64,000 nt of DNA from Heterodontus francisci (GCF_036365525.1 NW_027140825.1:1116001-1180000), one strand, 5' to 3'. Shown: positions 19,920-60,100, counted from the first letter of the stretch. Notes: a model not told the origin generated them from the letters alone. Made by a program: numbers and translations.

Positions 19920-20345
19920 AAGCACGTTGAGTCTTGGGTACCTCACCTCCTGACTTCTTAAAGACTGTCCACCATCTACAAGGCAACCCCTCAAACTAAT
20001 GCAGACTCTCTACAAGGTACAAGTCAGGAGTATGATGGAATACTCTCCACTCGAGTGTGGCTCCAACAACACTCAAGAAGGTCGACACCACCCAGGACAA
20101 AACAGCCCGCTTGATTGGCACCCTATCCACAAACATTCACTCCCTCCACCACCGACACACAGTGGCAGCAGTGTGGACTATATACAAGATGCACTGCATC
20201 AACTCCCAAAGGCTCCTTCGACAACACCTTCCAAACCCGCTACCTCTATCACCAAGAAGGACAAGGGCAACTTGGGATGGATAGCAAATGTTGGACTGGT
20301 CAGCGATGCTCACATCCCATTAAAGAATTTTTATAAATATTAAAT
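19920..20345 (+). mobile_element. LINE 3' fragment (CR1 superfamily)
   Basis: LYKVQVRSMMEYSP and SLHHRHTVAAV..IYKMH motifs. Confidence 0.7.
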
Positions 20346-20704
20346 GAATAGAAACTGCTTCTATAGGTAGAAGGCAACCAGGAGACATTGATTAAATGTA
20401 ACTGGCAGATGAATTAGTGGGGGGAGGGGGGAGAAGTGATGATTTATTTAAGCAGCGAGTTGTTATGATGTGGTTAGCACAGTCTGAAAGGGTGTTGGAA
20501 GCACTTTGAACAAGAACGTTCAAAAGGGAATGGAATGTACACGTGAATGGAAACAATGTGCACGGCGATGGGAGAGTAGCAGGGGGGAAGAGCATTAACT
20601 GGACAGTTCTTTCAAATAAGCCAGTAGGGGGGAGATGAGCTGAATGGGCTCCTTATGTGCTGTTATCCAAGATGATTCCATGACCTGGTGGCAGAAAATG
20701 AACA

Positions 20705-20978
20705 GAGATTCAATCTACTGCTGCCCTCTCCCAGTGGAAAATGAGACACTGAGAGTCAGTCTACTTCTGCCCCCTGCCGGTGGAAGATGAGCACTGAGAT
20801 TCAATCTACTGCTGCCCCCTGCTGGTGGAAGATGAGCCACTGAGATTCAATCTACTGCTGCCCCCTGCTGGTGGAAAATGAGCATTGAGATTCAATCCAC
20901 TACTGCCCCCTGCTGGTGGAAAATGAGCACTGAGATTCAATCGACTGCTGCCCCATGCCGTTGGAAGTTGAGCACTGA
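20705..20978 (-). promoter_or_regulatory. Six 45-bp tandem repeats with CTCF-type cores, adjoining the RSS of V7
   Basis: Minus-strand CCAGCAGGGGGCAG at 20825-20812, 20871-20858 and 20916-20903 matches the CTCF consensus CCASYAGRKGGCRS. The repeat is certain; CTCF function is inferred. Confidence 0.75.
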
Positions 20979-20998: not shown

Positions 20999-21037
20999 GG
21001 TTTTTGCAGCTGCTGATCCGCTTTCTCAAACACTGTG
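20999..21037 (-). other. 23-RSS of V7
   Basis: CACAGTG, 23-nt spacer, GCAAAAACC. Confidence 0.92.
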
Positions 21038-21805
21038 CGATACTACAAGTGCAGAAATAGACAGCGGTGAGAGATGGAGCGGCGTCTCTCAGTGCAAAAG
21101 TAAACAGTGTATTGCTGTCTTTGACTGCATTAAATGACTCGGACGTGTAATTGGTAACAGATCCTTCTGTTACCGAATAGAGCAGAGCTTCCAGTGCCCT
21201 GTCTGGTTGTTGTCTGTACCAGTACATATGGGGATAGCCAGTATTGGTCAGCGTGCATCTGAGTGTTGTCGACTCCCCTGCTGCAATCGATAGGATAGAG
21301 GGCGACTGTTCCACATAGGAGGAGAGTATTCCTGAGGAATGGAACATCGATTAGATTAATATTTGAGTCAATAATGGATTGGAGCAGGAGCTGCATTGCA
21401 AGAAAGAAAGGGCTTACATTAATATAGAGCCGTTCAGGACCTCAGGACATCAGAAACGGCTTTGCAACCAATGTAGGTACCCCCTTAGTACTGCCTCTGC
21501 GACAGTGCAGCACTCCCTCAGTACTGCTTCGTCGACAGTGCAGCACTTCCTCAATAGTGCATCTGCGACAGTGCAGCACTCCCTCTGTACTGCCTCTGCG
21601 ATGGTCCAGCACTCCCTCGGTCCTGACACCTGGGTTGTCAGCCTTGACTTTAAGCTCAAGTGTTCTAGAGTGAGACTCTGACACAGGAGTGTTTTAGACA
21701 GAATCACCGCTGACATTACAATACATCATTCTACACAGTTTCTGACTTTGACTTACGTGGGAAGAGTGCAGCCATCACGATTAGACAGAGAACCTCATGC
21801 AACAT
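21038..21805 (-). CDS. TRBV: TRBV segment V7, apparently functional (leader 21805-21757, V exon 21331-21038)
   Basis: Leader MLHEVLCLIVMAALFP with GTAAGT donor; LRC, WYRQ and TAVYFCTCS motifs. Confidence 0.88.
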
Positions 21806-23110
21806 GATTTCTTCATTCGATACGAACTCGATGTGTGAACGTGTGGAGTTTTCAACAACACACTTGCAGGCGGTTTCTATTTTATATCCAATTAAATACC
21901 CAGCATCCGGTTGTCATTGTGATTGGCAGTCACTTACTGCGACACTCTGCTCCACCCCATTACTTTGCATAGCAATGTCGTAGAATGAGACAACACAGGA
22001 GGGTAGGGGGATATTGAATAGAGGTGTTCACATTTCAGAAAGGGCTTTGATCGAGTATAATTCAGGGAAACAACCCTCTATACCCAGAGAGTATGCCCAT
22101 CCCTTATTGCCCCTGAGAATGTGATGGTGAACCATCTTCGGGAATACCTGCTAGGCCATATCAGAGGGCAGTTAATAGTCAACCACATTGCTGTGGGTCT
22201 GCAGTCACATATAGGCCAGACCAGGTAGGAATGGCGGATTTCCTTCCCTGAAGGTAATCAATGAATACGTTGGGTTTTTACGACACTCCATGTTCAGGAT
22301 TACTCATACTTTCCATTCTAGATTATTATTTATTTAATTAATTGAATTTAAATTGCATTTCTGCCCCGGTGGGAATTGAATTCAAGTCTGGGGATCAATA
22401 GTCCATGCCTCTGGTTTACTAGCCCAGTAACATAACTGCTCTGCTGCCGAACCTCCGTGGTGAATGGGAGCTAAATTGTTAAATTGTTCACTGGTCTGAA
22501 CTGCTAGTTTCTTTGAAGAACACATTAAATGTGACTCGAGTCTGAGGTGAAAGTGGGTAAAGAGTTTTCAGCAGCTTCTGAACTCGCTTTCAGGAGGCAG
22601 GTGTCCCAGAGATGAAGGTATCTGGAGAGGGGTTTCGCCTTTGAACAGTGTGAAACAGCGCTCAGATGGTTCAGGGTTCTGAGCTGAGTTAGTTTCTGTG
22701 CATTGGGGATTTGTTCACCTCTGTGTAGTGAAGGTTAGAGGGAGATTAACAAGACTGGTACCAGGGATGAGGGACTTCAGTTACTGTGGAGAGACTGGAG
22801 AAGCTGGGGGTTTCTCTCCTTGGAGCAGAGAAGGTTAATGGTAGATGTGATACAGATATTGAAGATCATAGAGGATTTTGATAGATAATTGATAACACAT
22901 CACATCATCTATTGACCAATATATAGAAAATCTATGTAAAGATGGTCAGTCATTACATTACTGCAGTATGTTTAATTAGTTCATACAAACTGTAAACACC
23001 TAAAGATATAGTTGGATAGTTACAGAGACAGAGACATAGGTAACCAGGTAGAGAGATAGATCGATAGATAGAGAGACAGACAGCCAGGTGGACAGATAGT
23101 TATGAACTCT

Positions 23111-23380
23111 GAGATTCAATCTACTGCTGCCCCCTGCCGGTGCAAGATGAGCACTGAGATATAATCTTCTGCTGCCACTTGCTGGTGGAGATGAGCACTG
23201 AGAGTCTGTCTACTACTGCCCCCTGTCGGGGGAGGATGAGCACTGACATTCAACCTACTGCTGCCGCCTGCTGGTGGAAGATGAGCACTGACATTCAATC
23301 TACTGCTGCCCCCTGCTGGTGGAAAATGAGCGTGAGACTCAATCTACTGCTGCCACCTGCCGGTGGATGTTGAGCACTGA
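23111..23380 (-). promoter_or_regulatory. Six 45-bp tandem repeats with CTCF-type cores, adjoining the RSS of V8
   Basis: Units carry CCAGCAGGGGGCAG, CCGGCAGGTGGCAG, CCAGCAAGTGGCAG and similar on the minus strand. Confidence 0.72.
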
Positions 23381-23400: not shown

Positions 23401-23439
23401 GGTTTATGTCGCTGCGGGTCCGCTTTCTCAAACACTGTG
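23401..23439 (-). other. 23-RSS of V8
   Basis: CACAGTG, 23-nt spacer, ACATAAACC. Confidence 0.88.
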
Positions 23440-24134: not shown

Positions 24135-25681
24135 GATTTCTTCATTCGATACTAACTCGATGTGTGAACGTGTGGAGTTTTCAACAACACACTTGCAGGC
24201 AGTTTCTATATTGTATCCAATCAAATACTCAGTATCCGGTTGTGATTGTGATTGGCAGTCACTTACTGCGACACTCTGCTCCACCCCATTACTTTGCATA
24301 GTAATGTTGTTGAATGATACAACACAGGAGGATAGGGGGAGATTGAATAGTGGTGTTCACATTTCAGAAAGGGCTTTGATAGAGTAGAATTCAGGGAAAC
24401 AGCCTTCTACACCCACAGAATGTGCCCATTCCTTATTGCTCCTGAGAATGTGGTTGTGAACCATCTTCGGGAATACCTGCTGGGCCATATCAGAGGGCAG
24501 TTAATAGTCAAACTCATTGCTGTGGGTCTGCAGTCACTTATAGGCCAGACCGGGTAAGAACGGCAGATTTCCTTCCTTGAAGGATATCAATGAATACGTT
24601 GGGTTTTTATGACACTCCATGTTCAGAATTGCTCATACTATCCATGATAGATTTTTATATATTTATTTATTTAATTGAATTTATATTCCATTTCTGCCCC
24701 TGGTGAGGAGTGAACTCATGTCTGGGTAACATTAGTCCAGGCCTCTGGATTACTAGTCCAGTAAAATAACTGCTCTGCTACCGTACCTCCTTGCTGAATG
24801 GAGGTTAAAGGGTTAAATTGCTCACTGGTTTGAACTGCTAGTTCCTTTGAAGAACACATCAAATGTGACTCGAGTCTGAGATGAAAGTGGGTAAAGAGTT
24901 TTCAGCAGCTTCTGAACTCGCTGTCAGGAGGCAGGTGTCCCAGAGATGAAGTTATCTGGAGAGGGGTCTCGCCTTTGAACAGTGTGAAACAGCGCTCAGA
25001 TGGTTAAGGGTTCCGAGCTGAGTTAGTTCCTGTACATTGGGAGGTTTCTCGCCTCCGTGTAGTGACGACTAGAGAGAGGGAGAGGGTTGGAGGGAGAGGG
25101 ATGGAGAGAGGGAGCGACAGGACGTTACTGATCAGTCATGATCTCATTGAAGGGCGGAGTGTTTTCGAGGTGATGAATGAACTCCTTGTGTTCCCAGGTC
25201 GCTGTTCAAGTGTGTTCCAGACTCTGATGTTTATCATGGTCCAACAGCGCACTCTGCTGTCCATTTGGCGAAAGAAAACACCGTGACATCCATCGACAAC
25301 TGATGTATCTATCTCTCTCTCTCTCTATCTATCTATCTCTCTATCTATCTATCGGTGTTTATCAGATCTTCATTTCACATATTAAAATCTGTAATAATCT
25401 CTCTAAGACCGTTGAATGTTTACCCTTCAGTTTCTCCTTTCTGGAGCAAAGATCCCCCAATGTTCAAACTATCTTGATAACTTTAACCTCTGTGTTCTGA
25501 TATCATTCCTGTAAAGTCTATTCCACAATTCCCCTGTGCTTCTATATCTAACCTGTCACTTTCTATTTAAATCCGCACTGTCTTCTTGTGAGAAACATGT
25601 TCCCAATGATAAAAAAAACCAACCAACAGGAAGCAGCACAGCCTGGTTTTATCTGAAACAGGTGTTTCCTGCTGCCTTTGG

Positions 25682-25720
25682 GGTTTTTGTTGAACTGCTC
25701 CATCTCTCTGAGTCACTGTG
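25682..25720 (-). other. 23-RSS of V9
   Basis: Consensus CACAGTG, 23-nt spacer, ACAAAAACC. Confidence 0.95.
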
Positions 25721-26176
25721 AAGACTCCAGTCACAGAAATACACGGCCGAGTGATTCTCCCGCAGGCTGGAGGACTCCAGTTTGAACTCGTACTTATTCA
25801 GTCTCTCGGCAGTAAAACCGTCCACCGTCCCCTCTGGATCCACATAGTTAGCAGTACTGGAGAAAAACATCAACAGCGGCTCCTTCCCTGGCTCTTGTCT
25901 GTACCAGTACATGTAGATGTTACTGCTGCTCCCCTCCATTGTGCACCTCAGTTCCACTCCTTTCCTGGGAAACCTGGAGACAGCAGCGGGAGTCTGGAGG
26001 ATAGTCTGTGAGTTCACATCTGGGAGAGAGATGGAGAGAGGAGGAGATCAGTAAACAGGGAACTTCTGGGGATGAAAGGGAGACAGGGAGAAGAGGGGAC
26101 AGTTATTACCGATAGTTTTTGCATTTCACACTCACTTACAATGAAACAAGATTATCAGACACAGTAACTGATACAT
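25721..26176 (-). CDS. TRBV: TRBV segment V9 (TRBV30-like family), open frame (leader 26176-26140, V exon 26019-25721)
   Basis: Leader MYQLLCLIILFH with GTAAGT donor; QTILQTP...LRC...WYRQ...SAVYFCDWS. Confidence 0.87.
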
Positions 26177-31335: not shown

Positions 31336-31945
31336 CCTTATTTATTTATACCCCAGAAACGCAATGAGCTCCAATATAGTGACCTAAACCATCCAGAACC
31401 TAAACCATCCAGCATCTGCGGTACCTTGTGTTCAGTTCACCAGACTGTAACCGGGATGTAGTTCTATAATTATCAGGAGAGGTTCATAGACAAGTTTCAA
31501 AGTCCCGATTGAAACAACATCAATAATCTGAAACTTATCACGGTCCTACACCGCCCTCTGCTGTCCCTTTGGAGAAAGACAACACAGTCAGTGAATAAAA
31601 CACAACAGTGTCTGTCTGCCTGCCAGCTACCTATCGACCTATCTCCCTACCTATCTGATCTTCACTTCACACATTAAACCCTTTCATAAGCTTTCTAAGA
31701 ACTATGAATGTTCACCCTTCAGTCTTCTCCTTTCTGGAGCAAAGATGTTCAAACTATCTTTGTTCCGATATCATTCCTGTAAAGTCGATTTCACAATTCC
31801 CCTGTGCTTCTATATCTAACCTCTCACTTTCTGTTTAAATCCGCCCTGTCTTCTTGTGAAAAACACTTTTCCAATGCCAAAAACACCCAACAGGACGCAG
31901 CACAGCCTGGTTTTATCTGAAACAGGTGTTTCCTGCTGCCTTTGG

Positions 31946-34778: not shown

Positions 34779-36068
34779 CTTTTACTTTAAGCTGCCTTCT
34801 GAATCAGCAAAGAGAAGAGAGCAGGAGTGAGGAGTGTTGTCAATAACCAACCCACTCTTTGCAAATCATTGGGAGGAACAGGAAGAGCATTAGGAAGTGA
34901 TGCAGAGATGGTGACGCCCAGGTCAACAAGTTAGAGTGGAGTAGGTTGACAACGTCTCTCTCTCTATCTATCTCAATCCGCCTTCCTCTCTCTTTCTTAC
35001 ACTTTGTTTCTATCTCTCTCTCTCTCTCTCTGCATGTATCGAGCTTTATGTCTCCAACTCTTTCAATCTCTTTCTCACTCTGTATCTGTGTCTGTGTGTG
35101 TGTGTGTGAGTGTGTGTGTGTGTGTGTGTCGTTCTCTCTCTGTCTCCCTCTGTCCCGTTCATTTACGCTGAGTTTTTCCTCTCTATGTCTCCCTGATTCA
35201 CCCTCTCTGTCTCTGTGTTTCATCACCGGATGTATTGAGTCCCTGTGCATTGGGGGTTGTTCCCCTCTGTGCAGTGAAGGTGAGAGGGATATTAACCAGA
35301 CTGGTGCCAGGGATGAGGGACTTCAGTTACTGTGGAGAGACTGGAGAATGTGGGGGTTTCTCTACTTGCAGCACAGAAGGTTAATGGTAGATGTGATACA
35401 GACATTGAAGATCATAGAGGATTTTGATAGATAATTGATGACAAACCACATCATCGACTGGTCAATATATAGAAAATCTCTGAAAAGATGGTCATTCATT
35501 ACATTATTACAGTATGTTTAATCAGTTCATACAAACTGTAATCAGCTAAAGATAGAGTTAGATAGATAGCGAGAAAGAGCGATAGATAACCAGGTAGAGA
35601 GATAGATAGATAGACAGTCAGGTACACAGATAGATATATAGAGAGGTAGAGAAATACAGAGATAGAGGGAAAGTCAGATAGGTAGAGATTTAGCGAGCTA
35701 GATAGAGAGGCAGTCACTGCCCATGTTAAAGACAGGGATGTTAATTGGCATTCTCTCGTTTTACACCGGCTTTGTAGCTAGTGGGAGAGAGAGGGAGGGA
35801 GAGAGAGGGAGAGTAGGTTTGGAGAAAGAGGGATGGAGAGAGGGGGAGAGAGGGGGATGGAGAGAGGGATGGAGAAAGAGGGATGGAAAGAGGGAGCGAC
35901 AGGAAGTTATTGATCAGTCATGATCTCATTGAAGGTCGGAGTGTTTCCGAGGTGATGAATGGTCTCCTTGTGTTCCCAGGTCACTGTTAAAGTGTGTTGC
36001 AGACTCTGATGTTTATCATGGTCCTACAGTGCACTCTGCTGTCCCTTTGGAGAAAGGAAACACAGTGA

Positions 36069-36632: not shown

Positions 36633-37559
36633 CTCCCACTTGACACTGCCCTCTCAAACAGCAAAGGAAGTGGAACAGAGGAAATCAGTTCTGTGACTAA
36701 CCAATCCGCTCTTTCCAAGTCATTGAGTAAAACATGAAGGGCATGAGGAAGTAATGCAGTGTTGGACACGCCCCTTCCAGCACCCAACCAATCAGAATGG
36801 ACGTGGTTGCTTATGATGGTTGAGTGACTGGAGTAAGTGTTGTTAACATCCCCAACAAGGGTGTCTGTTGTTCAGTTTCTAATTTGCTGATTAGAAATCT
36901 CCAATTGTACGTAATGAACCTCATCGGCATTCCCACATTAGCCACATGTAGATTTCCAATTATAGACATCTGCATTCCAAATGATCTGCTCCTGTAGGGG
37001 ATGTATTAGTGTGTGGCTGACTTGACTAGATTCTTAATCCACAGCCTCGGCTAGAGTTATAGCGACGTGGGGCGGGGGAGGGGGGGGGGGGGTGAATCCC
37101 ACCAACACAAATAAAGACATTTCAATGTCATTAATAAATCTATATTTTCAAAAGAATCTCGTCTAATGGTGACCATTGTTGCAACAATCCATCTCGTTCA
37201 CTGATGTTAGGGAAGGAAATCTACCGCCTTCACCTGGTCTGGTCTACATGTGACTCCGGATCCACACAATGTGGTTGACCGTTAAATGCCCTCTGGAATG
37301 GCCAAGCAAGTCAGTCAGTTCAAGGGCAATCAGGGATGGGCAATAAGTGCTGGCCGAGCCAGCGAGGCCCACATTCCATGAACGAATTAAGAAAAACAGC
37401 CAGATGTTGATTCACAAATGGTCAGGTGGGACTCCTGGCAAACGTTTTCTGCAACATTGGCCCGAGGGAAGTAGGTGCAACAATATCTGGGTCACACTGG
37501 GCTGCTGATCTATTCTACAGCTTGGTCTGTGCTCATTACTGTGCCCATCACCATCAGGG

Positions 37560-39180
37560 AGGATCAAATCTACTGCTGCCCACTGCCGGGGGAAGATGAG
37601 CACTGAGATTTAATCTACTGCTGCCCCCTGCCGGGGGAAGATGAGCGCAGAGATTCAATCTACTGCTGCCCACTGCCGGGGGAAGATGAGCATTGAGATT
37701 TAATCTACTGCTGCCCCCTGCCGGGGGAAGATGAGCTCAGAGATTCAATCTACTGCTGCCCCCTGCCGGGGGAAGATGAGCGCAGAGATTCAATCTACTG
37801 CTGCCCCCTGCCGGGGGAAGATGAGCACTGAGATTCAATCTACTGCTGCCCCCTGCCGGGGGAAGATGAGCATTGAGATTTAATCTACTGCTGCCCCCTG
37901 CCGGGGGAAGATGAGCACTGAGATTCAATCTACTGCTGCCCCCTGCCGGGGGAAGATGAGCACTGAGATTCAATCTACTGCTGCCCCCTGCCGGGGGAAG
38001 ATGAGCACTGAGATTCAATCTACTGCTGCCCCCTGCCAGGGGAAGATGAGCACTGAGATTCAATCTACTGCTGCCCCCTGCCGGGGGAAGATGAGCATTG
38101 AGATTCAATCTACTGCTGCCCCCTGCCGGGGGGAGATGAGCACTGAGATTTAATCTACTGCTGCCCCCTGCCGGGGGAGATGAGCACTGAGATTTAATCT
38201 ACTGCTGCCCCCTGCCGGGGGAAGATGAGCATTGAGATTTAATCTACTGCTGCCCCCTGCCGGGGGAAGATGAGCACTGAGATTCAATCTACTGCTGCCC
38301 CCTGCTGGGGGAAGATGAGCACTGAGATTCAATCTACTGCTGCCCCCTGCCGGGGGAAGATGAGCGCTGAGATTCAATCTACTGCTGCCCCCTGCCGGGG
38401 GAAGATGAGCGCAGAGATTCAATCTACTGCTGCCCCCTGCCGGGGGAAGATGAGCACTGAGATTCAATCTACTGCTGCCCCCTGCCGGGGGAAGATGAGC
38501 ATTGAGATTTAATCTACTGCTGCCCCCTGCCGGGGGAAGATGAGCACTGAGATTCAATCTACTGCTGCCCCCTGCCGGGGGAAGATGAGCACTGAGATTC
38601 AATCTACTGCTGCCCCCTGCCGGGGGAAGATGAGCACTGAGATTCAATCTACTGCTGCCCCCTGCCGGGGGAAGATGAGCATTGAGATTCAATCTACTGC
38701 TGCCTCCTGCCGGGGGGAGATGACCACTGAGATTTAATCTACTGCTGCCCCCTGCCGGGGGGAGATGAGCAATGAGATTTAATCTACTGCTGCCCCCTGC
38801 CGGGGGAAGATGAGCATTGAGATTTAATCTACTGCTGCCCCCTGCCGGGGGAAGATGAGCACTGAGATTCAATCTACTGCTGCCCCCTGCCGGGGGGAGA
38901 TGAGCACTGAGATTCAATCTACTGCTGCCCCCTGCCGGGGGGAGATGAGCACTGAGATTTAATCTACTGCTGCCCCCTGCCGGGGGGAGATGAGCACTGA
39001 GATTTAATCTACTGCTGCCCCCTGCCGGGGGAAGATGAGCACTGAGATTCAATCTACTGCTGCCCCCTGCCGGGGGAAGATGAGCACTGAGATTCAATCT
39101 ACTGCTGCCCCCTGCCGGGGGAAGATGAGCATTGAGATTTAATCAACTGCTGCCCCCTGCCGGGGGAAGATGAGCACTGA
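37560..39180 (-). repeat. ~36 x 45-bp minisatellite, each unit with a CTCF-type core, adjoining the RSS of V15
   Basis: Unit GAGATTCAATCTACTGCTGCCCCCTGCCGGGGGAAGATGAGCACT; minus-strand core CCGGCAGGGGGCAG. Confidence 0.92.
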
Positions 39181-39200
39181 ACTCCCATTCATCCACTGCA

Positions 39201-39239
39201 GGTTTTTGCAGCTGCGGATCCGCTTTCTCAAACACTGTG
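39201..39239 (-). other. 23-RSS of V15
   Basis: CACAGTG, 23-nt spacer, GCAAAAACC. Confidence 0.92.
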
Positions 39240-40039
39240 CGATACTACAAGTGCAGAAATAGACAGCGGTGTGAGATGGAGCGGCGTCTCTCAGTGCCAA
39301 AGTAAACAGTGTATTGCTGGCTCTGACTGCCTTAAATGACTCGGACGTGTAATTGGTAACAGACCCTTCTGTAGCAGAATAGAACAGAGCTTCCAGTGCC
39401 CTGTCTGCTTGTTGTCTGTACCAGTATAGAAAGGAATAGTCAGTATTGGTCAGCGTGCATCTGAGTGTTGTCGACTCTCCTGCGGAAAGCGATAGGATAG
39501 AGGGCGACTGTTCCACATAGGAGGAGAGTATTCCTGTGGAATGGAACATCGATTAGATTATTATTTCAGTCAATAATGGATTGGAGCAGGAGCTGCATTG
39601 CAAGAAATAAAGGGCTTACATTAATATATCGCCGTTCAGGACCTCAGGACATCAGAAAGGGCTTTGCAACCAATGTAGGTACTCCCTCAGTACTGTCTCT
39701 GCGACAGTGCAGCACTCCCTCAGTGCCGCTTCGTCGACAGTGCAGCACTTCCTCAATAGTGCCTCTGTGACAGTGCAGCACTCCCTCTGTGCTGACTCTG
39801 CGACAGTGCAGCACTCTCTCAGTACAGCCTCTGCGATAGTGCAGCACTCCCTCGGTCCTGACACCTGGGTTGTCAGCCTTGACTTTGAGCTCAATGTTCT
39901 GTAGTGAGACTCTGACACAGGAGTGTTTTGGACAGAATCACCGCTGACATGACAATACATTATTGTGCACAGTTTCTGACTTTGACTTACGTGGGAAGAG
40001 TGCAGCCATCAAGGTTAGACAGAGAACTTCATGCAACAT
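39240..40039 (-). CDS. TRBV: TRBV segment V15, apparently functional (leader 40039-39991, V exon 39533-39240)
   Basis: Paralog of V7/V8; open frame ending TAVYFCTCS; intact splice sites. Confidence 0.88.
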
Positions 40040-41244
40040 GATTTCTTCATTCGATACTAACTCGATGTGTGAACGTGTGGAGTTTTCAACAACACACTTG
40101 CAGTCGGTTTCTATATTGTATCCAATTAAATACCCAGCATCCGGTTGTCATTGTGATTGGCAGTCACTTACTGCGACACTCTGCTCCTCCCCATTACTTT
40201 GCAAAGCAATGTTGTAGAATGATACAACACAGGAGGATAGGGGGAGATTGAATAGAGGTGTTCACATTTCAGAAAGGGATTTGATAGAGTAGAATTCAGG
40301 GAAACAACCCTCCATACCCAGAGAGTGTGTACATCCCTTATTGCCCCTGAGAAGGTGGTGGTGAACCATCTTCGGAATTACCTGCTGGGCCATATCAGAG
40401 GGCAGTTAACAGTCAACTACAATGCTGTGGGTCTGCAGTCACATATAGGCCAGACCGGGTAAGAATGGCAGATTTCCTTCCCTGAAGGTTATCAATGAAT
40501 ACGTTGGCTTTTTACGACACTCCATGTTCAGAATTGCTCTTACTTTCCATTACAGATTTTATTTATTTACTTAATTAAATTTAAATTCCATTTCTGCCCC
40601 TGCTGAGAACTGAACTCATATCTGGGGATCATTAGTCCAGGCCTCTGGATTACTAGTCCAGTAACATAACTGCTCTGCTCCCGTACCTCGTTGCTGAATC
40701 GGAGTTAAAGTGTGAAATAGTTCACTGGTCTGAACTGCTAGTTTCTTTGAAGAACACATCAAATGTGACTCGAGTCTGAGATGAAAGTGGGTAAAGAGTT
40801 TTCAGCAGCTTCTGAACTCGCTGTCAGGAGGCAGGTGTCCCAGAGATGAAGGTATCTGGAGAGCGGTCTCGCCTTTCTACAGTGTGAAACAGTGCTCAGA
40901 TGGCTAAGGGTTCTGATCTGGGTTAGTTCCTGTACATTGGGGAGTTGTTCACCTCTGTGTAGTGAAGGTTAGAGGGAGATGAACCAGACTGGAACCAGGG
41001 ATGAGGGACTTCAGTTACTGTGGAGAGACTGTAGAAGCTGGGGGTTTATCCCCTTAGAGCAGAGAAGGTTAATGGAAGATGTGATTCTAGATATTGAAGA
41101 TCATAGAGGATTTTGATAGATAATTGATGACAAACCAGATCATCAACTGGTTAATATATAGAAAATCTATGAAAAGATGGGCATTCATTACATTACTGCA
41201 ATATGTTTAATTAATTCATACAAACTGTAATCACCTAAAGATAT

Positions 41245-41680: not shown

Positions 41681-42007
41681 TCACTGCCCCTGTAAAAGGC
41701 AGGGTTGTTAATTGTCATTCTCTCATTTTACACCAGCTTGGTAACTGGAGTGAGAGAGAGGGATGGAGGGAGAGAGAGAGAGAGAGTGGGGGGAATGCAG
41801 AGAGGGACCGACAAGAAGTTATTGATCAGTCATGATCTCATTGAAGGGCGGAGTGTTTCCGAGGTGATGAATGTTCTCCTTGTGTTCCCAGGTTACTGTT
41901 CAAGTGTGTTCCAGACTCTGATGTTTATCATGGTCCTACAGCGCACTCTGCTGTCCCTTTGGAGAAAGAAAACACTGTGACATCAAACCACACCGTATGT
42001 ATGTATG

Positions 42008-42652: not shown

Positions 42653-43109
42653 AAGACTCCAGGCTCAGAGATACACGGCCGAGTGATTCTCCTGCAGGCT
42701 GGAGGTCTCCAGGTTGAACTGGGAGTCAGTCGGTCTCTCCACAGTGAAACCGCCCACCGTCCCCTCTGGATCCACATAGCTAGCAATACTGGAGTAAAAC
42801 ATCAGCAGCGGCTCCTTCCCCGGCTCTTGTCTGTACCAGTACATGGAGATGATACTGCTGCTCCCCTCCAGAGTGCACCTCAGTTCCACTCCTTTCCCGG
42901 GTAATCTGGAGACAGCGGCAGGAATCTGGTGGATAGTCTGTGAGTTCACATCTGGGAGAGAGATGGAGAGAGGAGGATATCAGTAAACAGGGAACTTCTG
43001 GGAATGAAAGGGAGACAGAGAGAGGAGAGGAAGGTTATTAACAATAATTGTTTGCATTTCACACTCACATACAATGAAACAGGATTCTCAGACACAGTAA
43101 CTGATACAT
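42653..43109 (-). pseudogene. TRBV: TRBV segment V16, pseudogene (leader 43109-43073, V exon 42951-42653)
   Basis: The second conserved Cys codon is TGA (SAVYL*); RSS is degenerate. Confidence 0.9.
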
Positions 43110-43901: not shown

Positions 43902-44222
43902 ATGTCTTCAGGCACAGAAATACAAGGCCGAGTGATTCTCCCGCAGGCTGGAGGACTCCAGGTTGTACTCGGAGTCAGTCGGTCTCTCGGCAGTAAAATG
44001 GTCCACCGTCCCCTCTGGATCCACATAGTTAGCAGTATTGGAGTAAAACATCAACAGCGGCTTCTTCCCCAGATCTTGTCTGTACCAGTACATGCAGAGG
44101 GTACTGCTCCACTGTCCCCTCTGAGTTCACCCTTTGTGCAGTTAGGGAGTAAAACATCAGCTGCGGCTCCTTCCCCAGATATTGTCTGTCCCAGTACATC
44201 TGAGTGATACTGGTACCATGCA
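43902..44222 (-). pseudogene. TRBV: V17: leaderless chimeric TRBV relic made of two fused V fragments
   Basis: 44222-44109 encodes a V10/V13-type CDR1-CDR2 piece. It is fused to a V9-type piece (44108-43902) ending SALYFCA*. Confidence 0.85.
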
Positions 44223-44294: not shown

Positions 44295-45265
44295 ACTCCC
44301 TCAGTACTGACCCTCTGACAGTGCAGCACTCACTCAGGACTGCTCCTCTGACAGGGCAGCACTCCCTCGGTACTGACCCTTGACAGTGCAGCACTCACTC
44401 AGTACTGCTCCTCTCACAGTGCAGCACTCCCTCAGTACTGACCCTCTGACAGTACAGCACTCACTCAGTACTGACCCTCTGACAGTGCAGCACTAACTCA
44501 GTACTGCTCCTCTGACAGGGCAGCACTCCCTCAGTACTGACCCTCTGACAGTGCAGCACTCACTCAGTACTGCCCCAATAACTGTGCAGCACTCCCTCAG
44601 TACTGACCCTCTGACAGTGCAGCACTCCCTCAGTACTGACCCTCTGACAGTACAGCACTCACTCAGTACTGACCCTTGACAGTGCAGCACTCACTCAGTA
44701 CTGCTCCTCTCACAGTGCAGCACTCCCTCAGTACTGATCCACTGACAGTGCAGCACTCCCTCAGTACTGACCCTCTAACAGTGCAGCACTCCCTCAGTTT
44801 GTCCCTCTGACAGTGCAGCACTCCCTCAGTTCTGACCCTCGCAGAGTGCTGCACTCCCTCAGTTAGCCCCTCTGACAGTGCAGCACTCACTCAGTACTGA
44901 CCCTCCGACAGTGCAGCACTCCCTCAGTTTTCCCCTCTGACAGTGCAGCACTCACTCAGTACTGACCCTCTGTCAGTGCAGCACTCCCTCAGTACTGGCC
45001 CTGTCACAGTGCAGCACTCACTCAGTACTGACCCTCCGACAGTGCCGCACACCCTCAGTCCTGACCCTCTAACAGTGCAGCACTCCCTCAGTACTGACCC
45101 TCTGTGAGTGAAGCGCTCTCTCAGTACTGACCTTCCAACAGTGCAGCACTCCCTCAGTATTGACCCTCTGACAGTGCAGCACTCCCTCAGTATTGACCCT
45201 CTGACAGTACAGCACTCTCTCAGTACTGACCCTACGACAGTGCAGCACTCCCTCAGTACTGCCCT
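44295..45265. repeat. ~33-bp minisatellite (CAGTACTGACCCTCTGACAGTGCAGCACTCCCT), probably SINE-derived; short related arrays in the V7/V8/V15 introns
   Basis: Visible tandem repeat; related units at ~21480-21620, ~23880-23945 and ~39685-39850. Confidence 0.88.
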
Positions 45266-45267
45266 CA

Positions 45268-54100: not shown

Positions 54101-57100
54101 AAGGATGTTAAGGTATTTGAGAGGGTGCAGAGAAGATTTACCAGAATGGTTCCCGGGATGAGGGACGTCAGTGACATGAATAGATCGGAGAAGCTGGGGC
54201 TGTTCTCCGTGGAGAAGAGAAGATTAAGAGGAGATTTGATCAAGATGTTCATAATCAAGAGGGAACTGGACAGAGTAGTCAGGGAAAAACTGTTCCTCTT
54301 GGTGGGAGGATCCAGAACTAGACAGTTCCGAAGAAGGGTCACTGACCCGAAACGTTAACTCTGCTTCTCTTTCCACAGATGCTGCCAGACCTGCTTAGTG
54401 AATCCAGCATTTCTTGTTTTTGTTTCAGAACTAGAGAGCAACGGGTTTAGGTGAGTGGTAAAAGTCACAACAGAGACAGGGAAACCTTTTCACACAGTGA
54501 GTAGTTAGGATCTGAAATGCACTGCATGAGAGTTTAGTTTAGAAATACAGCACTGAAACAGGCCCTTCGGCCCACCGAGTCTGTGCCGACCATCAACCAC
54601 CCATTTATACTAATCCTACACTAATCCCATATTCCTACCAATCATCCCCACCTGTCCCTATATTTCCCTACCACCTACCTATACTCGTGGCAATTTATAA
54701 TGGCCAATTTACCTACCAACCTGCAAGTCTTTTGGCTTGTGGGAGGAAACCGGAGCACCCGGAGAAAACCCACGCAGACACAGGGAGAACTTGCAAACTC
54801 CACACAGGCAGTACCCAGAATTGATCCCGGGTCGCTGGAGCTGTGAGGCTGCAGTGCTAACCACTGTGCCACTGTGCCGCCCCTGTGTGCTGGAGGCAGG
54901 TTTAATTGAGGCTTTCAAAAGGGAATTGGATAATTGTCATGGCAGAAACAATCTGCAGCGCGACAGGAAAATGGCAGGAGTGGGAGTAGGTGAGTTGCAC
55001 TGCCAGAGAGCTGGCAGGGTGTAGATGGGCTGAACAGAAACTTTCTGTGCCGTAACCAGTCTTTGATTCCATGATTCTGCGATGATAACCCCACAAAGCA
55101 GATACCTCAGCTTCGAGAGCCCGGTGGGTAGTGGATGAAACCTCAGTAGATTCTCTAGTCGATTGTTCCTCGGATTCCTGAGTTTGAGCATCATGCTGCC
55201 CTCAGTCTCTATCACAGTCACCTCAGTCACTGCATTACACTCACCTCAGTCACTTTATCACATTCCCCTCAGTCACTTTATCCCACTCCCGTCAGTCGCT
55301 GTATCACACTCTCCTCAGTCGCTGCATCGCACTCCCTTCAGCTCACTGTATCACAATCCCCTCAGTCACTGCATTATATTCCCTTCAGTCACTGCATTCC
55401 ACTCCCCTCAGACAGTGTATCACACTCTACTCAGTCACTGTATCACACTCCCCCAGTCACTGTATCACACACCCTTCAGTTCACCGTATCCCACTCCCCT
55501 GAGACAGTGTCTCACACTCCCCTCAGACAGTGTATCACACTCCCCTCAGTCACTGTATCCCACTCCCCTCAGACAGTGTCTCACACTCCCCTCAGACACT
55601 GTATCGCAGTCCCCTCAGTCACTGTATCACACTCCCTTCAGTCACTGTATCCCACTCCCCTCAGTCAGTGTATCACACTCCCCTCAGACACTGTATCGCA
55701 CTCCCCTCACTCACTATATCACACTACCCTCAGTCGCTGCATCCCACTCCCCTCACTGACTGTATCCTACTCCCCTCAGTCACTGCATCCCACACCCCTC
55801 AGTCACTGTATCACACTCCCTTCAGTCACTGTATCCCACTCCCCTCAGTCAGTGTATCACACTCCCCTCCGTAACTGTATCACACTCCCCTCAGTCACTG
55901 TATCACACTCCCTGAGTGACTGTATCACACACCCCTCAGTCACTGTATCATGCTCCCCTCAGTCACTGCATCACACTCCCCTCACACACTGCATCACACT
56001 CCCCTCTGTCACTGTATCACACTTCCTCTGTCATTGTATCACACTACCCTCAGTCACTGTATCACATCCCCCTCAGACTCTGTATCACACTACGCTCAGT
56101 CACTGTATCACATCCCCCTCAGACTCTGTATCACACTACCCTCAGTCGCTGCATCACATCCCCTCAGTGACTGTATCATACTAACCCCAGACACTGTATC
56201 ACACTCCCCTCAGTGACTGTATCATACTACCCTCAGTCACTGTATCACACTCCCTTCAGTCACTGTGTCCCACTCACCTCAGTCAGTGTATCACTCCCCC
56301 CTCCGTAACTGTATCACACTCCCCTCAGTCACAGTATCACACTCCCTGAGTCACTGTATCACACTACCCTCTGTCACTGTATCACATCCCCCTCAGACAC
56401 TGTATCACACTACCCTCGGTCGCTGCATCACACTCCCCTCAGTGACTGCATCATACTACCCTCAGACACTGTATCACACTCCCCTCAGTCACTGTATCAC
56501 ACTCCCTGAGTGACTGTATCACACACCCCTCAGTGACTGCATCATACTACCCTCAGACAATGTATCACACTCCCCTCAGTCACTGTATCACACTCCCTGA
56601 GTGACTGTATCACACCCCGCAGTCACTGTATCATACTACCCTCAGACGCTGTATCTCACTCCCCTCAGTCACCTCATCCCACTCCTCTCAGTCTCTACAT
56701 CTCACTCCCCTCGGTCACGGCATCCAACTCCCCTCAGTCTCTACATCGCACTCCCTTCAGTCTCTACATCCCATTCCCCTCATTCACGGCATCCAACTCC
56801 CCTCATTCACTACATCCCAATCCTCTCAGTCTCTCCATCCCACTCCCCTCAGTCACGGCATCCAACTCCCCTCAGTCACTACATCCCACTCCCCTCAGCC
56901 ACTACATCCCACTCCCCTCAGTCTCTACATCGCACTCCCCTCAGTTTCTACATCCCACTCCCCTCAGTCTCAACATCGCACTCCCCTCAGTCATTACATC
57001 CCACTCCCCTCAGTCACTGCATCCCACTCCCCTCAGTCACTACATCCCACTCCCCTCAGCCAGTACATCCCACTCCCCTCAGTCTCAACATCGCACTCCC

Positions 57101-60100
57101 CTCAGTCATTACATCCCACTCCCCTCAGTCACTGCATCCCACTCCTCTCAGTCTCTACATCCCACTCCCCTCACTCACTACATGCCACTCCCCTCACTCA
57201 CTACTTCCCAATCCCTTCACCCACTACATGCCACTCCCCTAATCACTTCTTCCCACTGCCCTCAATCATTACTTCCCAGTCCCCTTAGTCAATGCATCCC
57301 ACTCCCCTCAGTCACTTATCCCACTCCCCTTAATTACATCATCCCACTCCCCTCAGTCACTGCATCTAACTCCCCTCAGTCACTGCATCCCACTCCCCTC
57401 AGTCACTACATCCCACTCCCCTCAGTCACCCCATCCCACTGCCCTCAGTCACCACATTCAACTCCCCACAGTCTCTACATCCCACTCCCCTAAGTCTCTA
57501 AATCTCTCACCCCTCAGTCACTGCATCCCACTTCCCTCAGTCACTGCATCCCACTCCACTCAGTCCATGCATCGCACTGCCCATGTCACGACATCCCACA
57601 CCACTCAATTACATCATCCCACTCCCCTCAATCACTGCATCCCACTCCCCTCAATTACATCATGCCACTCCCCTCAGTCCCTCCATCCCATTCCTCTCAG
57701 TCACTGCATCCCACTCTCCTCAGTCACCACATCCCACTCCCCTCAGTCACCCCATCCCACTCCCCTCAGTCACTGCAACCCACACCCCTCAGCCACTGCA
57801 TCCTACTCCTCTCAGTCACTGCATCCCTCTCCCCTCAATCAGTGCATCCCACTCCTCTCAGTCACTGCAACCCGCTCCCCTCAGCCACTGCATCCCACTC
57901 CTCTCAGGCACTGCATCCCACTCCCCTCAATCGGTGCATCCCACACCCCTCAATCAGTGCATTCCACTCCACTCAGTCTCTACATCCCACTTCCCTCAAT
58001 TACTGCATCCCACTCCGCTCAATTACATCATCCCACTCCCCTCAGTCACTGCATCCCACTCCCCTCAGTCACTGCATCCCACTCCCCTCAATCACCACAT
58101 CCCACTCCCCTCAGTCACCACATCCCACTCCCCTCAGTCACCCCATCCCACTCCTCTCAGCCACTGCATCCCACTCCTCTCAGTCACTGCATCCCACTCC
58201 CCTCAATCAGTGCATCCCACTCCCCTCAGTCACTGCATCCCACTCCCCTCAGTCACTGCATCCCACACCCCTCAATCAGTGCATTCCACTCCCCAGTCAC
58301 TGCATCCCAATCCCCTCAGCCTCTGCATCCCACTCCCTTCCGTCACTACATCCCACTCCCCTCAATTACTGCATCCCACTGCCCTCAGTCCACTGCATCC
58401 CATTCCCCTCCGTCACTGCATCCCACTCCCCTCAGTCAGTGCATCCCACTCCTCTCAGTCACTACATCCCACTCCCCTCAGTCACTACATCCCACTCCCC
58501 TCAGTCTATGTATTCCACTCCCCTCAATTACATCATCCCACTCTCCTTAGTCACTCCATCCCAGTCCCCTCAGTCACCACATCCCTCTCCCCTCAGTCAC
58601 CCCATCCCACTCACCTCAGTCACTCCATCCCACTTCCCTCAGTCACCCCATCCCACTCCCCTCAGTCACTCCATCCAACTTCCCTCATTCACTCCCTTCC
58701 ACTTCCCGCAGTCACTCCATCCCACTTCCCTCAGTAAGAGACTGGATGATCTCGAGGACTGATCTTCTATGGTGCAACATTGGGTGTGGAATCTGTTTCG
58801 AATGCACCCCACAAGGGGGATACCTGATGTTCCAGACACCGCTGGGGTAGACGATGATCCCCTAGTGGATTCTCGAGTTGTTTGTTCCTCGGGTTCCTCA
58901 GTTGCGACAGTCTCTGGATCTGTAATAAAGGAAGAGGGCAGAGTGGAGAAAACCCGAAGAGCTCGTTTATTTAGTTCTGTAGTCCAGACAGTGTCAGATT
59001 TTCATCTTTATCAAACCCTCGAAGATCCTATCCAACTCCTCGTGAACATTGCTTCCTGGAGAGGGAGTGTGAGGTGCCCAGCACTGCAGTGGGGACCTGA
59101 CGTGAGCCATGAACACTGCAGGGATCAGAGTGCCTGATAGACAGAGACAGCAGAGTCTGGTTCAGTTCCCTAGAGTTTCAGTGAAGTACACTTTGTGTTT
59201 CAGATCCGTTATTCACTGTGTCCCTGACAATAAGGAGGGGAGTGAGTAAACCGTCTCATTTCTGTGGGTGACACGGGACATCCCAGAATCACCCTCTGGA
59301 TGATATAGAAGCATCAATGTACCTGTACAATACGCAGCATAATAAAACAAGGACTTCAACTCATAAACGAAGTAACTGCTGCAGTTTTTGATCTTTATCT
59401 CATGGACCTTGTCGCAGTGTTTTCTACCCCAGGATAAACAAACTGTCCGTGTTACTTCCCCCTGTCCCACGCTGGGATGGGAACCTGAAATGAGAGTTTA
59501 TAAATATTGAAGACTGTAACCCATGTGAACAGTGCTGTACAGTGAATGTAAATCTGATATTCTCAAGGCTGAAATTACCATTTAACCAGCCTGTAACATG
59601 TGTGGAGCAGTGAAAATCTGGGACAGCAGTCTCCGGAATCTTCCATCCACCAGAACTGAAACAAAAATCACAGAGTCAGTCCCTGAACTGATGGCAAATA
59701 TTAACTGTTAGAGAGACTGGTACCAGCAGATAGTACCAGAAACTGGGGGAAATCCCTTACTCTGCCCATATTGACTAGATTACCCTGAAATTGTTCCTTT
59801 ACCTTTTGGATAGGTATATGGATAAAGGAGAATGATGGGGTATAGATTAAATTGTCCTTGACAGAGGACAAAGGATCGGCACAACATTGTGGGCCGAAGG
59901 GCCTGTTCTGTGCTGTATGTTCTATGTTCTATGTACATTACCTTTTAAATCTGTACCATCCTTGAGCAAGATTATCATCACACTTCTCCTGACCGGAGCA
60001 CCCAGTGACATCACAATCGCTGCTCCTCCAGGGCTGGTCCAGGACTGTGTGATTTACACACGGGTCAGTGAGTGCAGAGTCTGTGACTGAGTGACAGAAA

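What the first reader, a model, noticed from the sequence alone, without database searches (positions are those of the whole stretch)
37560..39239. ~36-copy CTCF-motif VNTR beside the RSS of the most distal intact V: a possible tunable recombination anchor
Seen: the 45-bp unit found 6x at V7 and V8 is expanded to ~1.6 kb of highly homogeneous copies. The core CCCCCGGCAGGGGGCAGCA closely resembles the chicken beta-globin HS4 FII CTCF site (CCCCCGCTAGGGGGCAGCA, from memory). The nearest core is ~38 bp from the nonamer. The homogenised variant has a CpG (CCGG) at the 5' end of the core, a position where methylation is known to block CTCF. Inferred: a copy-number-variable, methylation-switchable super-anchor that could boost use of the farthest functional V and/or act as the locus boundary, comparable to the clustered 3' CBEs of mouse Igh.
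Basis: partly seen in the sequence, partly recalled or inferred. Interest (0 to 1): 0.9.

Follow-up and report, generated by a model that had tools for sequence, protein, structure and literature searches.

The report
CTCF-motif minisatellite behind shark TCR V
Right behind the recombination signal of an expressed shark T-cell-receptor beta V gene lies a 36-copy, 45-bp tandem repeat whose every unit carries a strong binding motif for the genome-looping protein CTCF, pointing the same way as the gene; this looks like a multiplied version of the V-gene CTCF sites that steer V(D)J recombination in mice, but binding and function are untested.

Summary
A 45-bp minisatellite (37567-39180, 35.9 copies, 95% matches) starts 35 nt after the nonamer of the 23-RSS of an intact, spliced, expressed TCR-beta-like V gene (V15, minus strand). 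By a CTCF weight matrix, 32 of 36 units score at least 16 bits. That equals the experimentally bound chicken HS4 FII site, with 17 of 19 bases identical. Paralogous V7 and V8 carry 4 and 6 strong units with near-consensus cores (22 bits, p about 1.5e-8 per position). All motifs read forward in the V direction. That is the orientation expected for a V-side loop anchor.

Each V15 core has a CpG at core position C2, the methylation-sensitive position. Contigs of a second species span units, RSS and V, so the layout is shared.

Not shown: CTCF binding, methylation state, copy-number variation or looping. V15 is the last intact V only within this window. Fourteen of the 17 Vs here lack an RSS-adjacent motif.

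The closest known cases are the mouse proximal VH CBEs and the Trbv1 downstream CBE. I rate it a new variant of a known kind.

First-reader notes of this scan, and one follow-up report, describe similar arrays on other DNA of this genome.

The parts
37567..39180 (-). 45-bp minisatellite of 36 units. Each unit reads, in V orientation, CCCCCGGCAGGGGGCAGCAG + TAGATTGAATCTCAGTGCTCATCTT. 32 units score at least 16 bits against the CTCF matrix.
   Evidence: TRF; unit table; matrix scores
39167..39200 (-). 34-nt lead between the nonamer and the first core. It is a degenerate partial repeat unit (...GGGAGTTCAGTGCTCATCTT), so the repeat effectively begins at the RSS.
39201..39239 (-). 23-RSS of V15: heptamer CACAGTG 39233-39239, 23-nt spacer, nonamer GCAAAAACC 39201-39209
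   Evidence: RSS scan
39240..39532 (-). V exon of V15 (V-set domain, ...TAVYFCTCSI)
   Evidence: Pfam V-set 6.3e-15. Every TCR chain among the listed solved-structure hits is a beta chain or a construct containing one. RNA contig depth is high here and drops about 40-fold at the heptamer.
39533..39989 (-). Leader intron of V15 (GT..AG on the minus strand). It holds a 33-bp genome-wide repeat at 39681-39860.
   Evidence: Joint 39532->39990 in contigs of runs X5 and X7; splice sites; TRF
39990..40039 (-). Leader exon of V15 (ATG at 40039; MLHEVLCLTLMAALFP)
   Evidence: depth in X5
20694..20978 (-). Paralogous array behind V7 (RSS 20999-21037): 4 strong units, core CCACCAGCAGGGGGCAGCA, 22.3 bits
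23102..23380 (-). Paralogous array behind V8 (RSS 23401-23439): 6 units of 13.6-22.3 bits

Best explanation
A CTCF-binding element lies directly 3' of the 23-RSS in one TRBV subfamily (V7, V8, V15). It was amplified as a 45-bp minisatellite. At V15 the array grew to 36 near-identical units by recent unequal exchange, including a block duplication of about 14 units.

Every motif reads forward in the V coding direction, toward the side where the V's RSS faces.

Most likely mechanism (inferred): in thymocytes CTCF occupies some of the units. It stalls cohesin that is extruding a loop from the D-J recombination centre. This holds the adjacent V15 RSS near the centre and raises V15 rearrangement, as the RSS-adjacent CBEs of mouse proximal VH genes and the Trbv1 downstream CBE do. 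Many sites in tandem would raise the chance that at least one is occupied.

Copy number itself is probably a by-product of minisatellite dynamics rather than a tuned setting.

Shown: anatomy, motif quality, orientation, V15 intact and expressed. Inferred: CTCF binding, loop anchoring, effect on V usage.
For: - Array anatomy.
- Motif strength: the V15 unit scores 16.8 bits, the same as the chicken FII site. V7/V8 units reach 22.4 of a maximum 27.2 bits.
- Chance: exact p is 1.1e-6 and 1.5e-8 per position, about 1e-4 and 1e-6 per 45-bp unit.
- FII sequence verified.
- The same JASPAR matrix marks oriented sites at TAD boundaries in a cartilaginous fish, the little skate (PMC10115646).
- All array motifs, and every hit of 12 bits or more in the window, are on the V strand.
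- V15 is intact, with a canonical 23-RSS.
- Contigs of a probable RNA run cover leader and V exon with the spliced joint. They stop at the heptamer, as rearranged transcripts would.
- Contigs from a second species span units, RSS and V at about 90% identity (record 26, 39079-39396).
- Mouse precedent: a CBE just 3' of the RSS in recombining proximal VH genes, and the Trbv1 CBE scramble that cut rearrangement 6-fold.
- Within the array, the 20-nt core carries only 4 singleton variants in 680 positions, against 38 in 850 for the rest of the unit.
Against: - No binding, chromatin, methylation or contact data exist for this organism in the tools.
- 14 of 17 Vs in the window have no RSS-adjacent motif. 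The element is subfamily-specific, not a rule of the locus.
- Outside the arrays, CTCF-like hits are not clearly enriched: 4 against about 1.7 expected on the minus strand at 12 bits.
- The numbers of variable sites in core and non-core are similar (4 of 20 against 7 of 25). Single units carry motif-killing changes (scores of 8.3, 10.7, 6.9), so there is no clear per-unit constraint.
- The expanded V15 variant is weaker than the V7/V8 units.
- This genome makes minisatellites very readily: 70 TRF rows in 64 kb. Other unchecked notes report tandem RSS arrays.
- Dense GC-rich arrays with a CpG in each unit are often methylated and unbound.
Its column sums are self-consistent and it scores FII well.
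Confidence: 0.5

Rival explanations
1. Neutral minisatellite. A real or former CTCF site, or a sequence that merely looks like one, happened to lie where a minisatellite arose. In vivo the array is methylated or heterochromatic and unbound. It has no effect on recombination, and its length only reflects slippage and unequal exchange.
For: - The window holds many other minisatellites of 23, 33, 37 and 38 bp, with up to 154 copies.
- The unit forms a C5/G5 hairpin as single-stranded DNA, which favours slippage.
- There is a higher-order block duplication.
- No per-unit constraint is evident, and several units are broken.
- CpG o/e of 0.29 gives no sign of a hypomethylated island.
- Most Vs do without such a site.
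Against: - The chance of a 22-bit motif in a random 45-bp unit is about 1e-6.
- Position and orientation match functional mouse V-associated CBEs.
- The unit-RSS-V layout persists in three paralogues and in a second species.
- 34 of 36 CpGs survive in the V15 array, although recent expansion could explain that.
Confidence: 0.3
2. Insulator or boundary rather than usage booster. The array mainly blocks the spread of transcription or of loop extrusion between V15 and its neighbours. On one side is V14, whose V exon lies about 1 kb from the distal end of the array. On the far side are the pseudogenes and the D8C-type gene. In this role it would terminate RAG scanning.
For: - Co-oriented multi-site clusters act as strong boundaries in mouse: the 3' CBEs, and an engineered 20-CBE array that altered Igh loop domains.
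- Beyond V15 the window holds only pseudogene Vs, satellites and a non-TCR gene (note s1-872614).
Against: - V7 and V8 carry the same element in the middle of the cluster.
- Other unchecked notes describe TRBVs interleaved with D8C genes on other pieces, so this need not be the end of the locus.
- A boundary facing the recombination centre does not exclude the booster role.
Confidence: 0.12
3. The copy number is an assembly artefact. The array exists, but its length of 36 units is mis-assembled, either collapsed or inflated.
For: The window has three N gaps. The reads tool could not lay reads on the array. The short contigs of run X1 show paralogue variants at the junction, not the window's own letters at 39187 and 39195.
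Against: The array has an ordered, non-periodic pattern of 18 unit types and unique flanks, as expected from long-read assembly. Another note reports a 37-unit array on another piece (unchecked).
Confidence: 0.05

Closest known systems
RSS-adjacent CTCF-binding elements of mouse proximal VH genes (VH81X-CBE type)
   Same: A CTCF motif lies a few tens of bp 3' of the V 23-RSS. By the convergent rule it is oriented toward the recombination-centre side. It is found on recombining Vs, while neighbouring pseudogenes lack it (PMC7930373). Here three intact family members have it, and V16 and V17 lack it.
   Different: The mouse sites are single copies. Here there are 4 to 36 tandem copies at a 45-bp period. 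The locus is TCR-beta-like in a cartilaginous fish. Binding and function are untested.
Mouse Trbv1 downstream CBE
   Same: Same locus type (TCR beta). The CBE lies downstream of a distal V. In mouse it anchors loop extrusion, and scrambling it cuts Trbv1 rearrangement about 6-fold (PMC10772921).
   Different: A single site, not an array. Here it is not established that V15 is the most distal V.
Clustered CBE super-anchors (the ten Igh 3' CBEs; the engineered 20-CBE array in the Igh VH region)
   Same: Many co-oriented CTCF motifs in one place, expected to give a strong loop anchor.
   Different: Those are separate sites that did not arise as a minisatellite. Here the sites are 45 bp apart, about one CTCF footprint. 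A 35-bp DNA holds ZF3-ZF11 (PMC10484683), so full simultaneous occupancy is uncertain.
CTCF-binding macrosatellites such as DXZ4
   Same: A tandem repeat whose every unit carries a CTCF site, with occupancy that depends on the chromatin state of the allele (PMC3491370, abstract).
   Different: DXZ4 is a large macrosatellite at a chromosome-scale hinge. This is a 45-bp minisatellite of 1.6 kb attached to a V gene's RSS.
Chicken beta-globin 5'HS4 FII insulator site
   Same: 17 of 19 core bases are identical and the matrix score is the same, 16.8 bits.
   Different: A single site in a different genomic context. The similarity is in the motif only, not homology.

Membership tests
CTCF-binding element (CBE) | Match to the CTCF core motif (CCASYAGRKGGCRSY-type; JASPAR MA0139.1) | tested here: met
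   32 of 36 units score 16.8-20.0 bits. V7/V8 units reach 22.4 bits. The FII control scores 16.8 bits. p = 1e-6 to 1.5e-8 per position.
CTCF-binding element (CBE) | CTCF occupancy in vivo or binding in vitro | not testable with these tools
   No ChIP or EMSA data are available. Skate TAD boundaries use the same motif, which is indirect support only.
CTCF-binding element (CBE) | Optional upstream (ZF9-11) motif at about -9 to -17 from the core | tested here: inconclusive
   The unit has CTCAGTGCT at -18 to -10. It shares CAGT.C with CTGCAGT-type upstream motifs, with a 1-bp longer spacer. No statistic was computed.
V-associated CBE 3' of the RSS (mouse proximal VH / Trbv1 type) | Lies just 3' of a V RSS | tested here: met
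   The first core starts 35 nt after the nonamer at V15 and V8. At V7 a degenerate first unit sits at that position and the first strong core starts 80 nt after the nonamer.
V-associated CBE 3' of the RSS (mouse proximal VH / Trbv1 type) | Orientation convergent with CBEs on the recombination-centre side | tested here: inconclusive
   All motifs read forward in the V direction, as a V-side anchor requires. The D-J-C side is outside the window. An unchecked note places a D-J-C 371 kb before the window start.
V-associated CBE 3' of the RSS (mouse proximal VH / Trbv1 type) | Present on used Vs and absent from pseudogenes; loss lowers V usage | tested here: inconclusive
   The three intact family members have it and pseudogenes V16 and V17 lack it. 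However, several apparently intact Vs of other families also lack it.
Minisatellite / VNTR | Head-to-tail units of 10-100 bp with interspersed variant units | tested here: met
   Period 45, 36 units, 18 unit types, and a 14-unit block duplication.
Minisatellite / VNTR | Copy number varies between individuals | not testable with these tools
Only paralogous arrays could be compared (4, 6 and 36 strong units).
TCR beta V gene segment | V-set domain, leader intron, 23-RSS, expression, beta-type similarity | tested here: met
   Pfam V-set 6e-15. Every TCR chain among the listed PDB hits is a beta chain or a construct containing one. 23-RSS. Spliced leader-V joint in probable RNA contigs. No constant region lies in the window. 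The large protein search found no named relatives.

The most novel reading that the evidence does not exclude
Sharks carry a natural dosage series of RSS-adjacent CTCF anchors: 4, 6 and 36 units here, and by other unchecked notes 8 to 37 units elsewhere in the genome. The number of units, and methylation of the C2 CpG, would set how often each V-beta is brought to the recombination centre. That would make CBE-guided V choice an ancestral feature of jawed-vertebrate antigen-receptor loci. It would also make the minisatellite a heritable, fast-evolving dial on the primary TCR repertoire.
Probability: 0.2. Interest if true: 0.8.

Novelty: new variant of a known kind. Interest (0 to 1): 0.55.

Why it matters
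V-segment-associated CTCF sites are a central element of current models of V(D)J recombination by loop extrusion. They have been dissected only in mouse.

Finding the same arrangement in a cartilaginous fish would push this mechanism back to the base of jawed vertebrates, or reveal convergence. The arrangement is a motif a few tens of bp behind the RSS, facing the D-J side.

The tandem form gives paralogous, and probably allelic, Vs that differ mainly in the number of sites. The question of how anchor strength sets V usage therefore becomes testable, using repertoire sequencing and long reads, in an animal that cannot easily be engineered.

If the array is unbound, the finding is simply one more minisatellite in a repeat-rich genome.

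Tried and rejected
Only the flank 39060-40400 could be laid.
- All runs laid were Logan contigs, so depth cannot be read as copy number or expression level.
- The search for homologous proteins with the V15 exon returned nothing. This is not informative, because of the word and length limits.
- The search of earlier findings by sequence was blank.
- Constraint on the core inside the arrays was inconclusive. High-frequency variants are confined to the non-core part (0 of 20 against 5 of 25 sites). The numbers of variable sites are similar, and broken units exist.
- Enrichment of CTCF-like motifs outside the arrays is not significant.
- The hexadecamer-like GGCAGCAG behind the nonamer of the other V family is not a CTCF core.
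- The distal flanks of the three arrays are not homologous, apart from a shared interspersed repeat at V15 and V7. No common far boundary of the duplication unit could be defined.
- Literature searches found no paper on CTCF sites in shark TCR loci.
- The species names of the runs are coded, so the second species could not be named.

Full report
WHAT IS THERE

Tandem Repeats Finder reports one array at 37567-39180: period 45, 35.9 copies, 95% matches, no indels, score 2913. Read on the minus strand, it parses into 36 units with the consensus CCCCCGGCAGGGGGCAGCAGTAGATTGAATCTCAGTGCTCATCTT. Twelve units are identical and 31 share the identical 20-nt core. Two shorter and older arrays of the same unit lie at 20694-20978 and 23102-23380.

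THE GENES

The window holds about 17 V segments, all on the minus strand (tblastn). Ten have a recognisable 23-bp-spacer RSS.

These three form one subfamily: V7 and V8 are each 86% identical to V15 at the amino-acid level. They are the only Vs followed by the 45-bp repeat.

V15 is intact:
- ATG at 40039 and a leader exon running to 39990.
- A GT..AG intron at 39533-39989.
- A V exon running to 39240.
- Heptamer CACAGTG, a 23-nt spacer and nonamer GCAAAAACC at 39201-39239.

The V15 exon is a V-set domain (Pfam 6e-15). Every TCR chain among the listed solved-structure hits is a beta chain or a construct containing one.

V16 (42653) has a stop in place of the conserved Cys and a CACACTG heptamer. 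V17 (43911) is frameshifted. V15 is therefore the last intact V in this window, and only in this window.

MOTIF TEST

The FII oligo of the chicken HS4 insulator printed in PMC3014928 contains cccccgctagggggcagca.

I scored the window with the JASPAR MA0139.1 count matrix. Its column sums run smoothly from 913 to 908, and it scores FII well, but it remains a recalled matrix. Results:
- V15 unit: 16.8 bits.
- FII: 16.8 bits.
- V7/V8 units (CCACCAGCAGGGGGCAGCA): 22.3-22.4 bits of a possible 27.2.

The exact score distribution gives p = 1.1e-6 per position for 16.7 bits and 1.5e-8 for 22.2 bits. That is about 1e-4 and 1e-6 for any 45-bp unit on either strand. The scores correspond to the 37th and 83rd percentiles of sites drawn from the matrix itself.

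Per array:
- V15: 32 of 36 units score at least 16 bits, and 35 of 36 at least 10.
- V7: 4 strong units.
- V8: 6 units of at least 13.6 bits.

The same matrix, at a threshold of 8, marks oriented sites at TAD boundaries in the little skate (PMC10115646). The mammalian motif therefore applies to cartilaginous fishes.

ORIENTATION AND POSITION

All array motifs read forward (CC.CC.GCAGGGGGCAG) in the V coding direction. The first core begins 35 nt after the nonamer. The 34 nt in between are themselves a degenerate partial unit.

By the convergent rule (established knowledge, Rao et al. 2014; the skate data agree), a forward motif on the V side points into a loop whose other anchor lies downstream of the V. 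That is toward the D-J-C side.

An unchecked note of this scan places a D-J-C cluster 371 kb before the window start. This is where minus-strand Vs would expect it. I could not see that DNA.

METHYLATION POSITION

Aligned to the 15-bp core, the unit reads C1 C2 G3 G4 C5 A6 G7 and onward, so the CCGG CpG is at C2. Motif-strand methylation at C2 is the dominant inhibitory mark in vitro, reducing binding 2- to 7-fold (PMC10325916).

The CpG is not special to V15, because several V7 and V8 units have CCGG and others CCAG. In V15, one unit has decayed to CCAG, which raises its score to 20.0 bits, and one to CTGG. The array is not a CpG island: o/e is 0.29 against 0.36 for the window. Nothing here says whether it is methylated.

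ARRAY DYNAMICS

The order of unit types is ABBCCDBEFGHBBBEBIJBKELCMBNBBEBIOEPQR. Units 12-17 (BBBEBI) recur at 27-31 (BBEBI), and identity is highest at a shift of 14 units (0.968). This points to a recent block duplication of about 630 bp.

The 20-nt core carries 4 singleton changes in 680 positions. The other 25 nt carry 38 changes in 850 positions, several of them at high frequency. However, the number of variable sites is similar (4 of 20 against 7 of 25), and single units carry motif-breaking changes. Constraint on individual units is therefore not shown.

As single-stranded DNA the unit forms a C5/G5 hairpin, which may favour slippage. The sequences distal to the three arrays are not homologous, apart from an interspersed repeat shared by V15 and V7.

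READS

I laid the flank 39060-40400 instead. All four runs are Logan contigs, so only presence and joints can be used.

- Run X5 (organism A; RNA by the tool's guess) covers the V exon and the leader with a joint 39532->39990. This is the GT..AG intron.
- Summed contig depth in X5 falls from about 5500 to about 150 at the heptamer. That fits rearranged, spliced transcripts of V15 or of a near-identical allele.
- X5 shows none of the other V-exon differences listed in table 3. All X1 and X5 contigs read C at 39252, which changes Thr to Ala next to the Cys.
- Runs X6 and X7 come from a second species. They hold contigs spanning repeat units, RSS and V (record 26: 39079-39396, 30 differences in 318), and also the spliced joint.
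- At 39119 and 39164 most contigs carry T, which gives the CCACC core. CCACC is therefore the commoner and probably older variant, and CCCCC is the derived, homogenised V15 form.

CONTEXT IN THE WINDOW

Outside the arrays, CTCF-like hits are few:
- At 12 bits or more there are 0 on the plus strand and 4 on the minus strand, against about 1.6 expected per strand. This is not significant.
- Fourteen of the 17 Vs have no RSS-adjacent motif.
- Four Vs of the second family have a single co-oriented CTCF-like motif (11-18 bits) 190-700 bp behind the RSS. It lies inside a conserved island of about 65 bp.

COMPARISON WITH WHAT IS KNOWN

In mouse Igh, proximal recombining VH genes have a CBE just 3' of the RSS and neighbouring pseudogenes lack it. 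Mutating the VH81X CBE lowers its use, and repairing a pseudogene's CBE makes that pseudogene the most used (PMC7930373).

In mouse Tcrb, the most distal V, Trbv1, has a downstream CBE. Scrambling it cuts Trbv1 rearrangement about 6-fold and removes its loops (PMC10772921).

The shark element matches these in position and orientation. It differs in being a minisatellite of 4 to 36 sites spaced by about one CTCF footprint. A 35-bp DNA holds ZF3-ZF11 (PMC10484683).

I found no paper on CTCF sites in shark TCR loci.

This scan's first readers noted similar arrays on other pieces of the same genome, with 8, 11, 13 and 37 units behind V RSSs. They also noted arrays at V/D-J boundaries. One follow-up report reached the same cautious reading for a low-copy 45-bp array. 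These notes are unchecked and are not independent evidence.

VERDICT

- The motif, its place, its direction and the C2 CpG are real, and mouse precedent makes a role in V choice plausible.
- CTCF binding, methylation switching, copy-number variation, loop anchoring and the 'most distal V / locus boundary' claims are not shown.
- The boundary claim is weakened by notes of TRBVs interleaved with D8C genes on other pieces, and of another V/D-J-C boundary array 172 kb beyond the window end.

I rate it a new variant of a known kind, with interest 0.55.

Noticed in passing
window 25245-25263, 31549-31567, 36027-36045, 41939-41957 (minus strand): Four Vs of the second family (ends at 25721, 31979, 36236, 42653) have a single co-oriented CTCF-like motif, GGGACAGCAGAG[G/T]GC..., scoring 11-18 bits. 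It lies 190-700 bp behind the RSS, inside an island of about 65 bp. That island stays alignable in all four copies even where the flanks of one copy no longer align.
   Followed up: partly
window, directly 3' of the nonamers at 25682, 27343, 29666, 34265, 43863, and at the V12 and V16 tails (about 31940 and 42610): Second-family Vs share a conserved 24-nt stretch right after the nonamer, CCAAAGGCAGCAGGAAACACCTGT. It contains an E-box (CACCTG). It is not a CTCF core, and it may be a different RSS-adjacent protein site.
   Followed up: no
window 39681-39860 (in the V15 leader intron), 21482-21625, 44295-45266; also 40320-40364: The 33-bp repeat ACTCCCTCAGTACTG...CAGTGCAGC, and an element at 40320-40364, have summed contig depths hundreds to thousands of times those of neighbouring sequence in all four runs and both species. 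These are genome-wide repeats. The 45-bp unit, by contrast, looks low-copy.
   Followed up: partly
window 39252: All contigs of runs X1 and X5 read C where the window has T. This changes the codon after the conserved Cys from Thr to Ala (FCTC to FCAC). The sequenced individual or allele therefore differs from the assembly. At 39187 and 39195 the X1 contigs show only paralogue-type letters.
   Followed up: no
window 42653-42979 and 43911-44217 (minus strand): Two V pseudogenes lie beyond V15. V16 has a stop at the conserved Cys codon and heptamer CACACTG. V17 is frameshifted and has an in-frame stop near its end, although its RSS is canonical.
   Followed up: yes
window 55199-58735 and 60194-61248: Very long 23-bp tandem arrays (154 and 46 copies; CCCTCAGTCACTGCATCCCACTC) lie in the region another note assigns to a D8C/uromodulin-like gene. 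It is not clear whether they are coding (mucin-like) or intronic.
   Followed up: no
window 37150-37560 and 20250-20450: An interspersed repeat (…GGCCAGCA.TTATTGCCCATCCC…TTGCCCTTGAAC…) sits just distal to the V15 and V7 arrays. The same sequence appears as loose ends of many contigs in both species.
   Followed up: no
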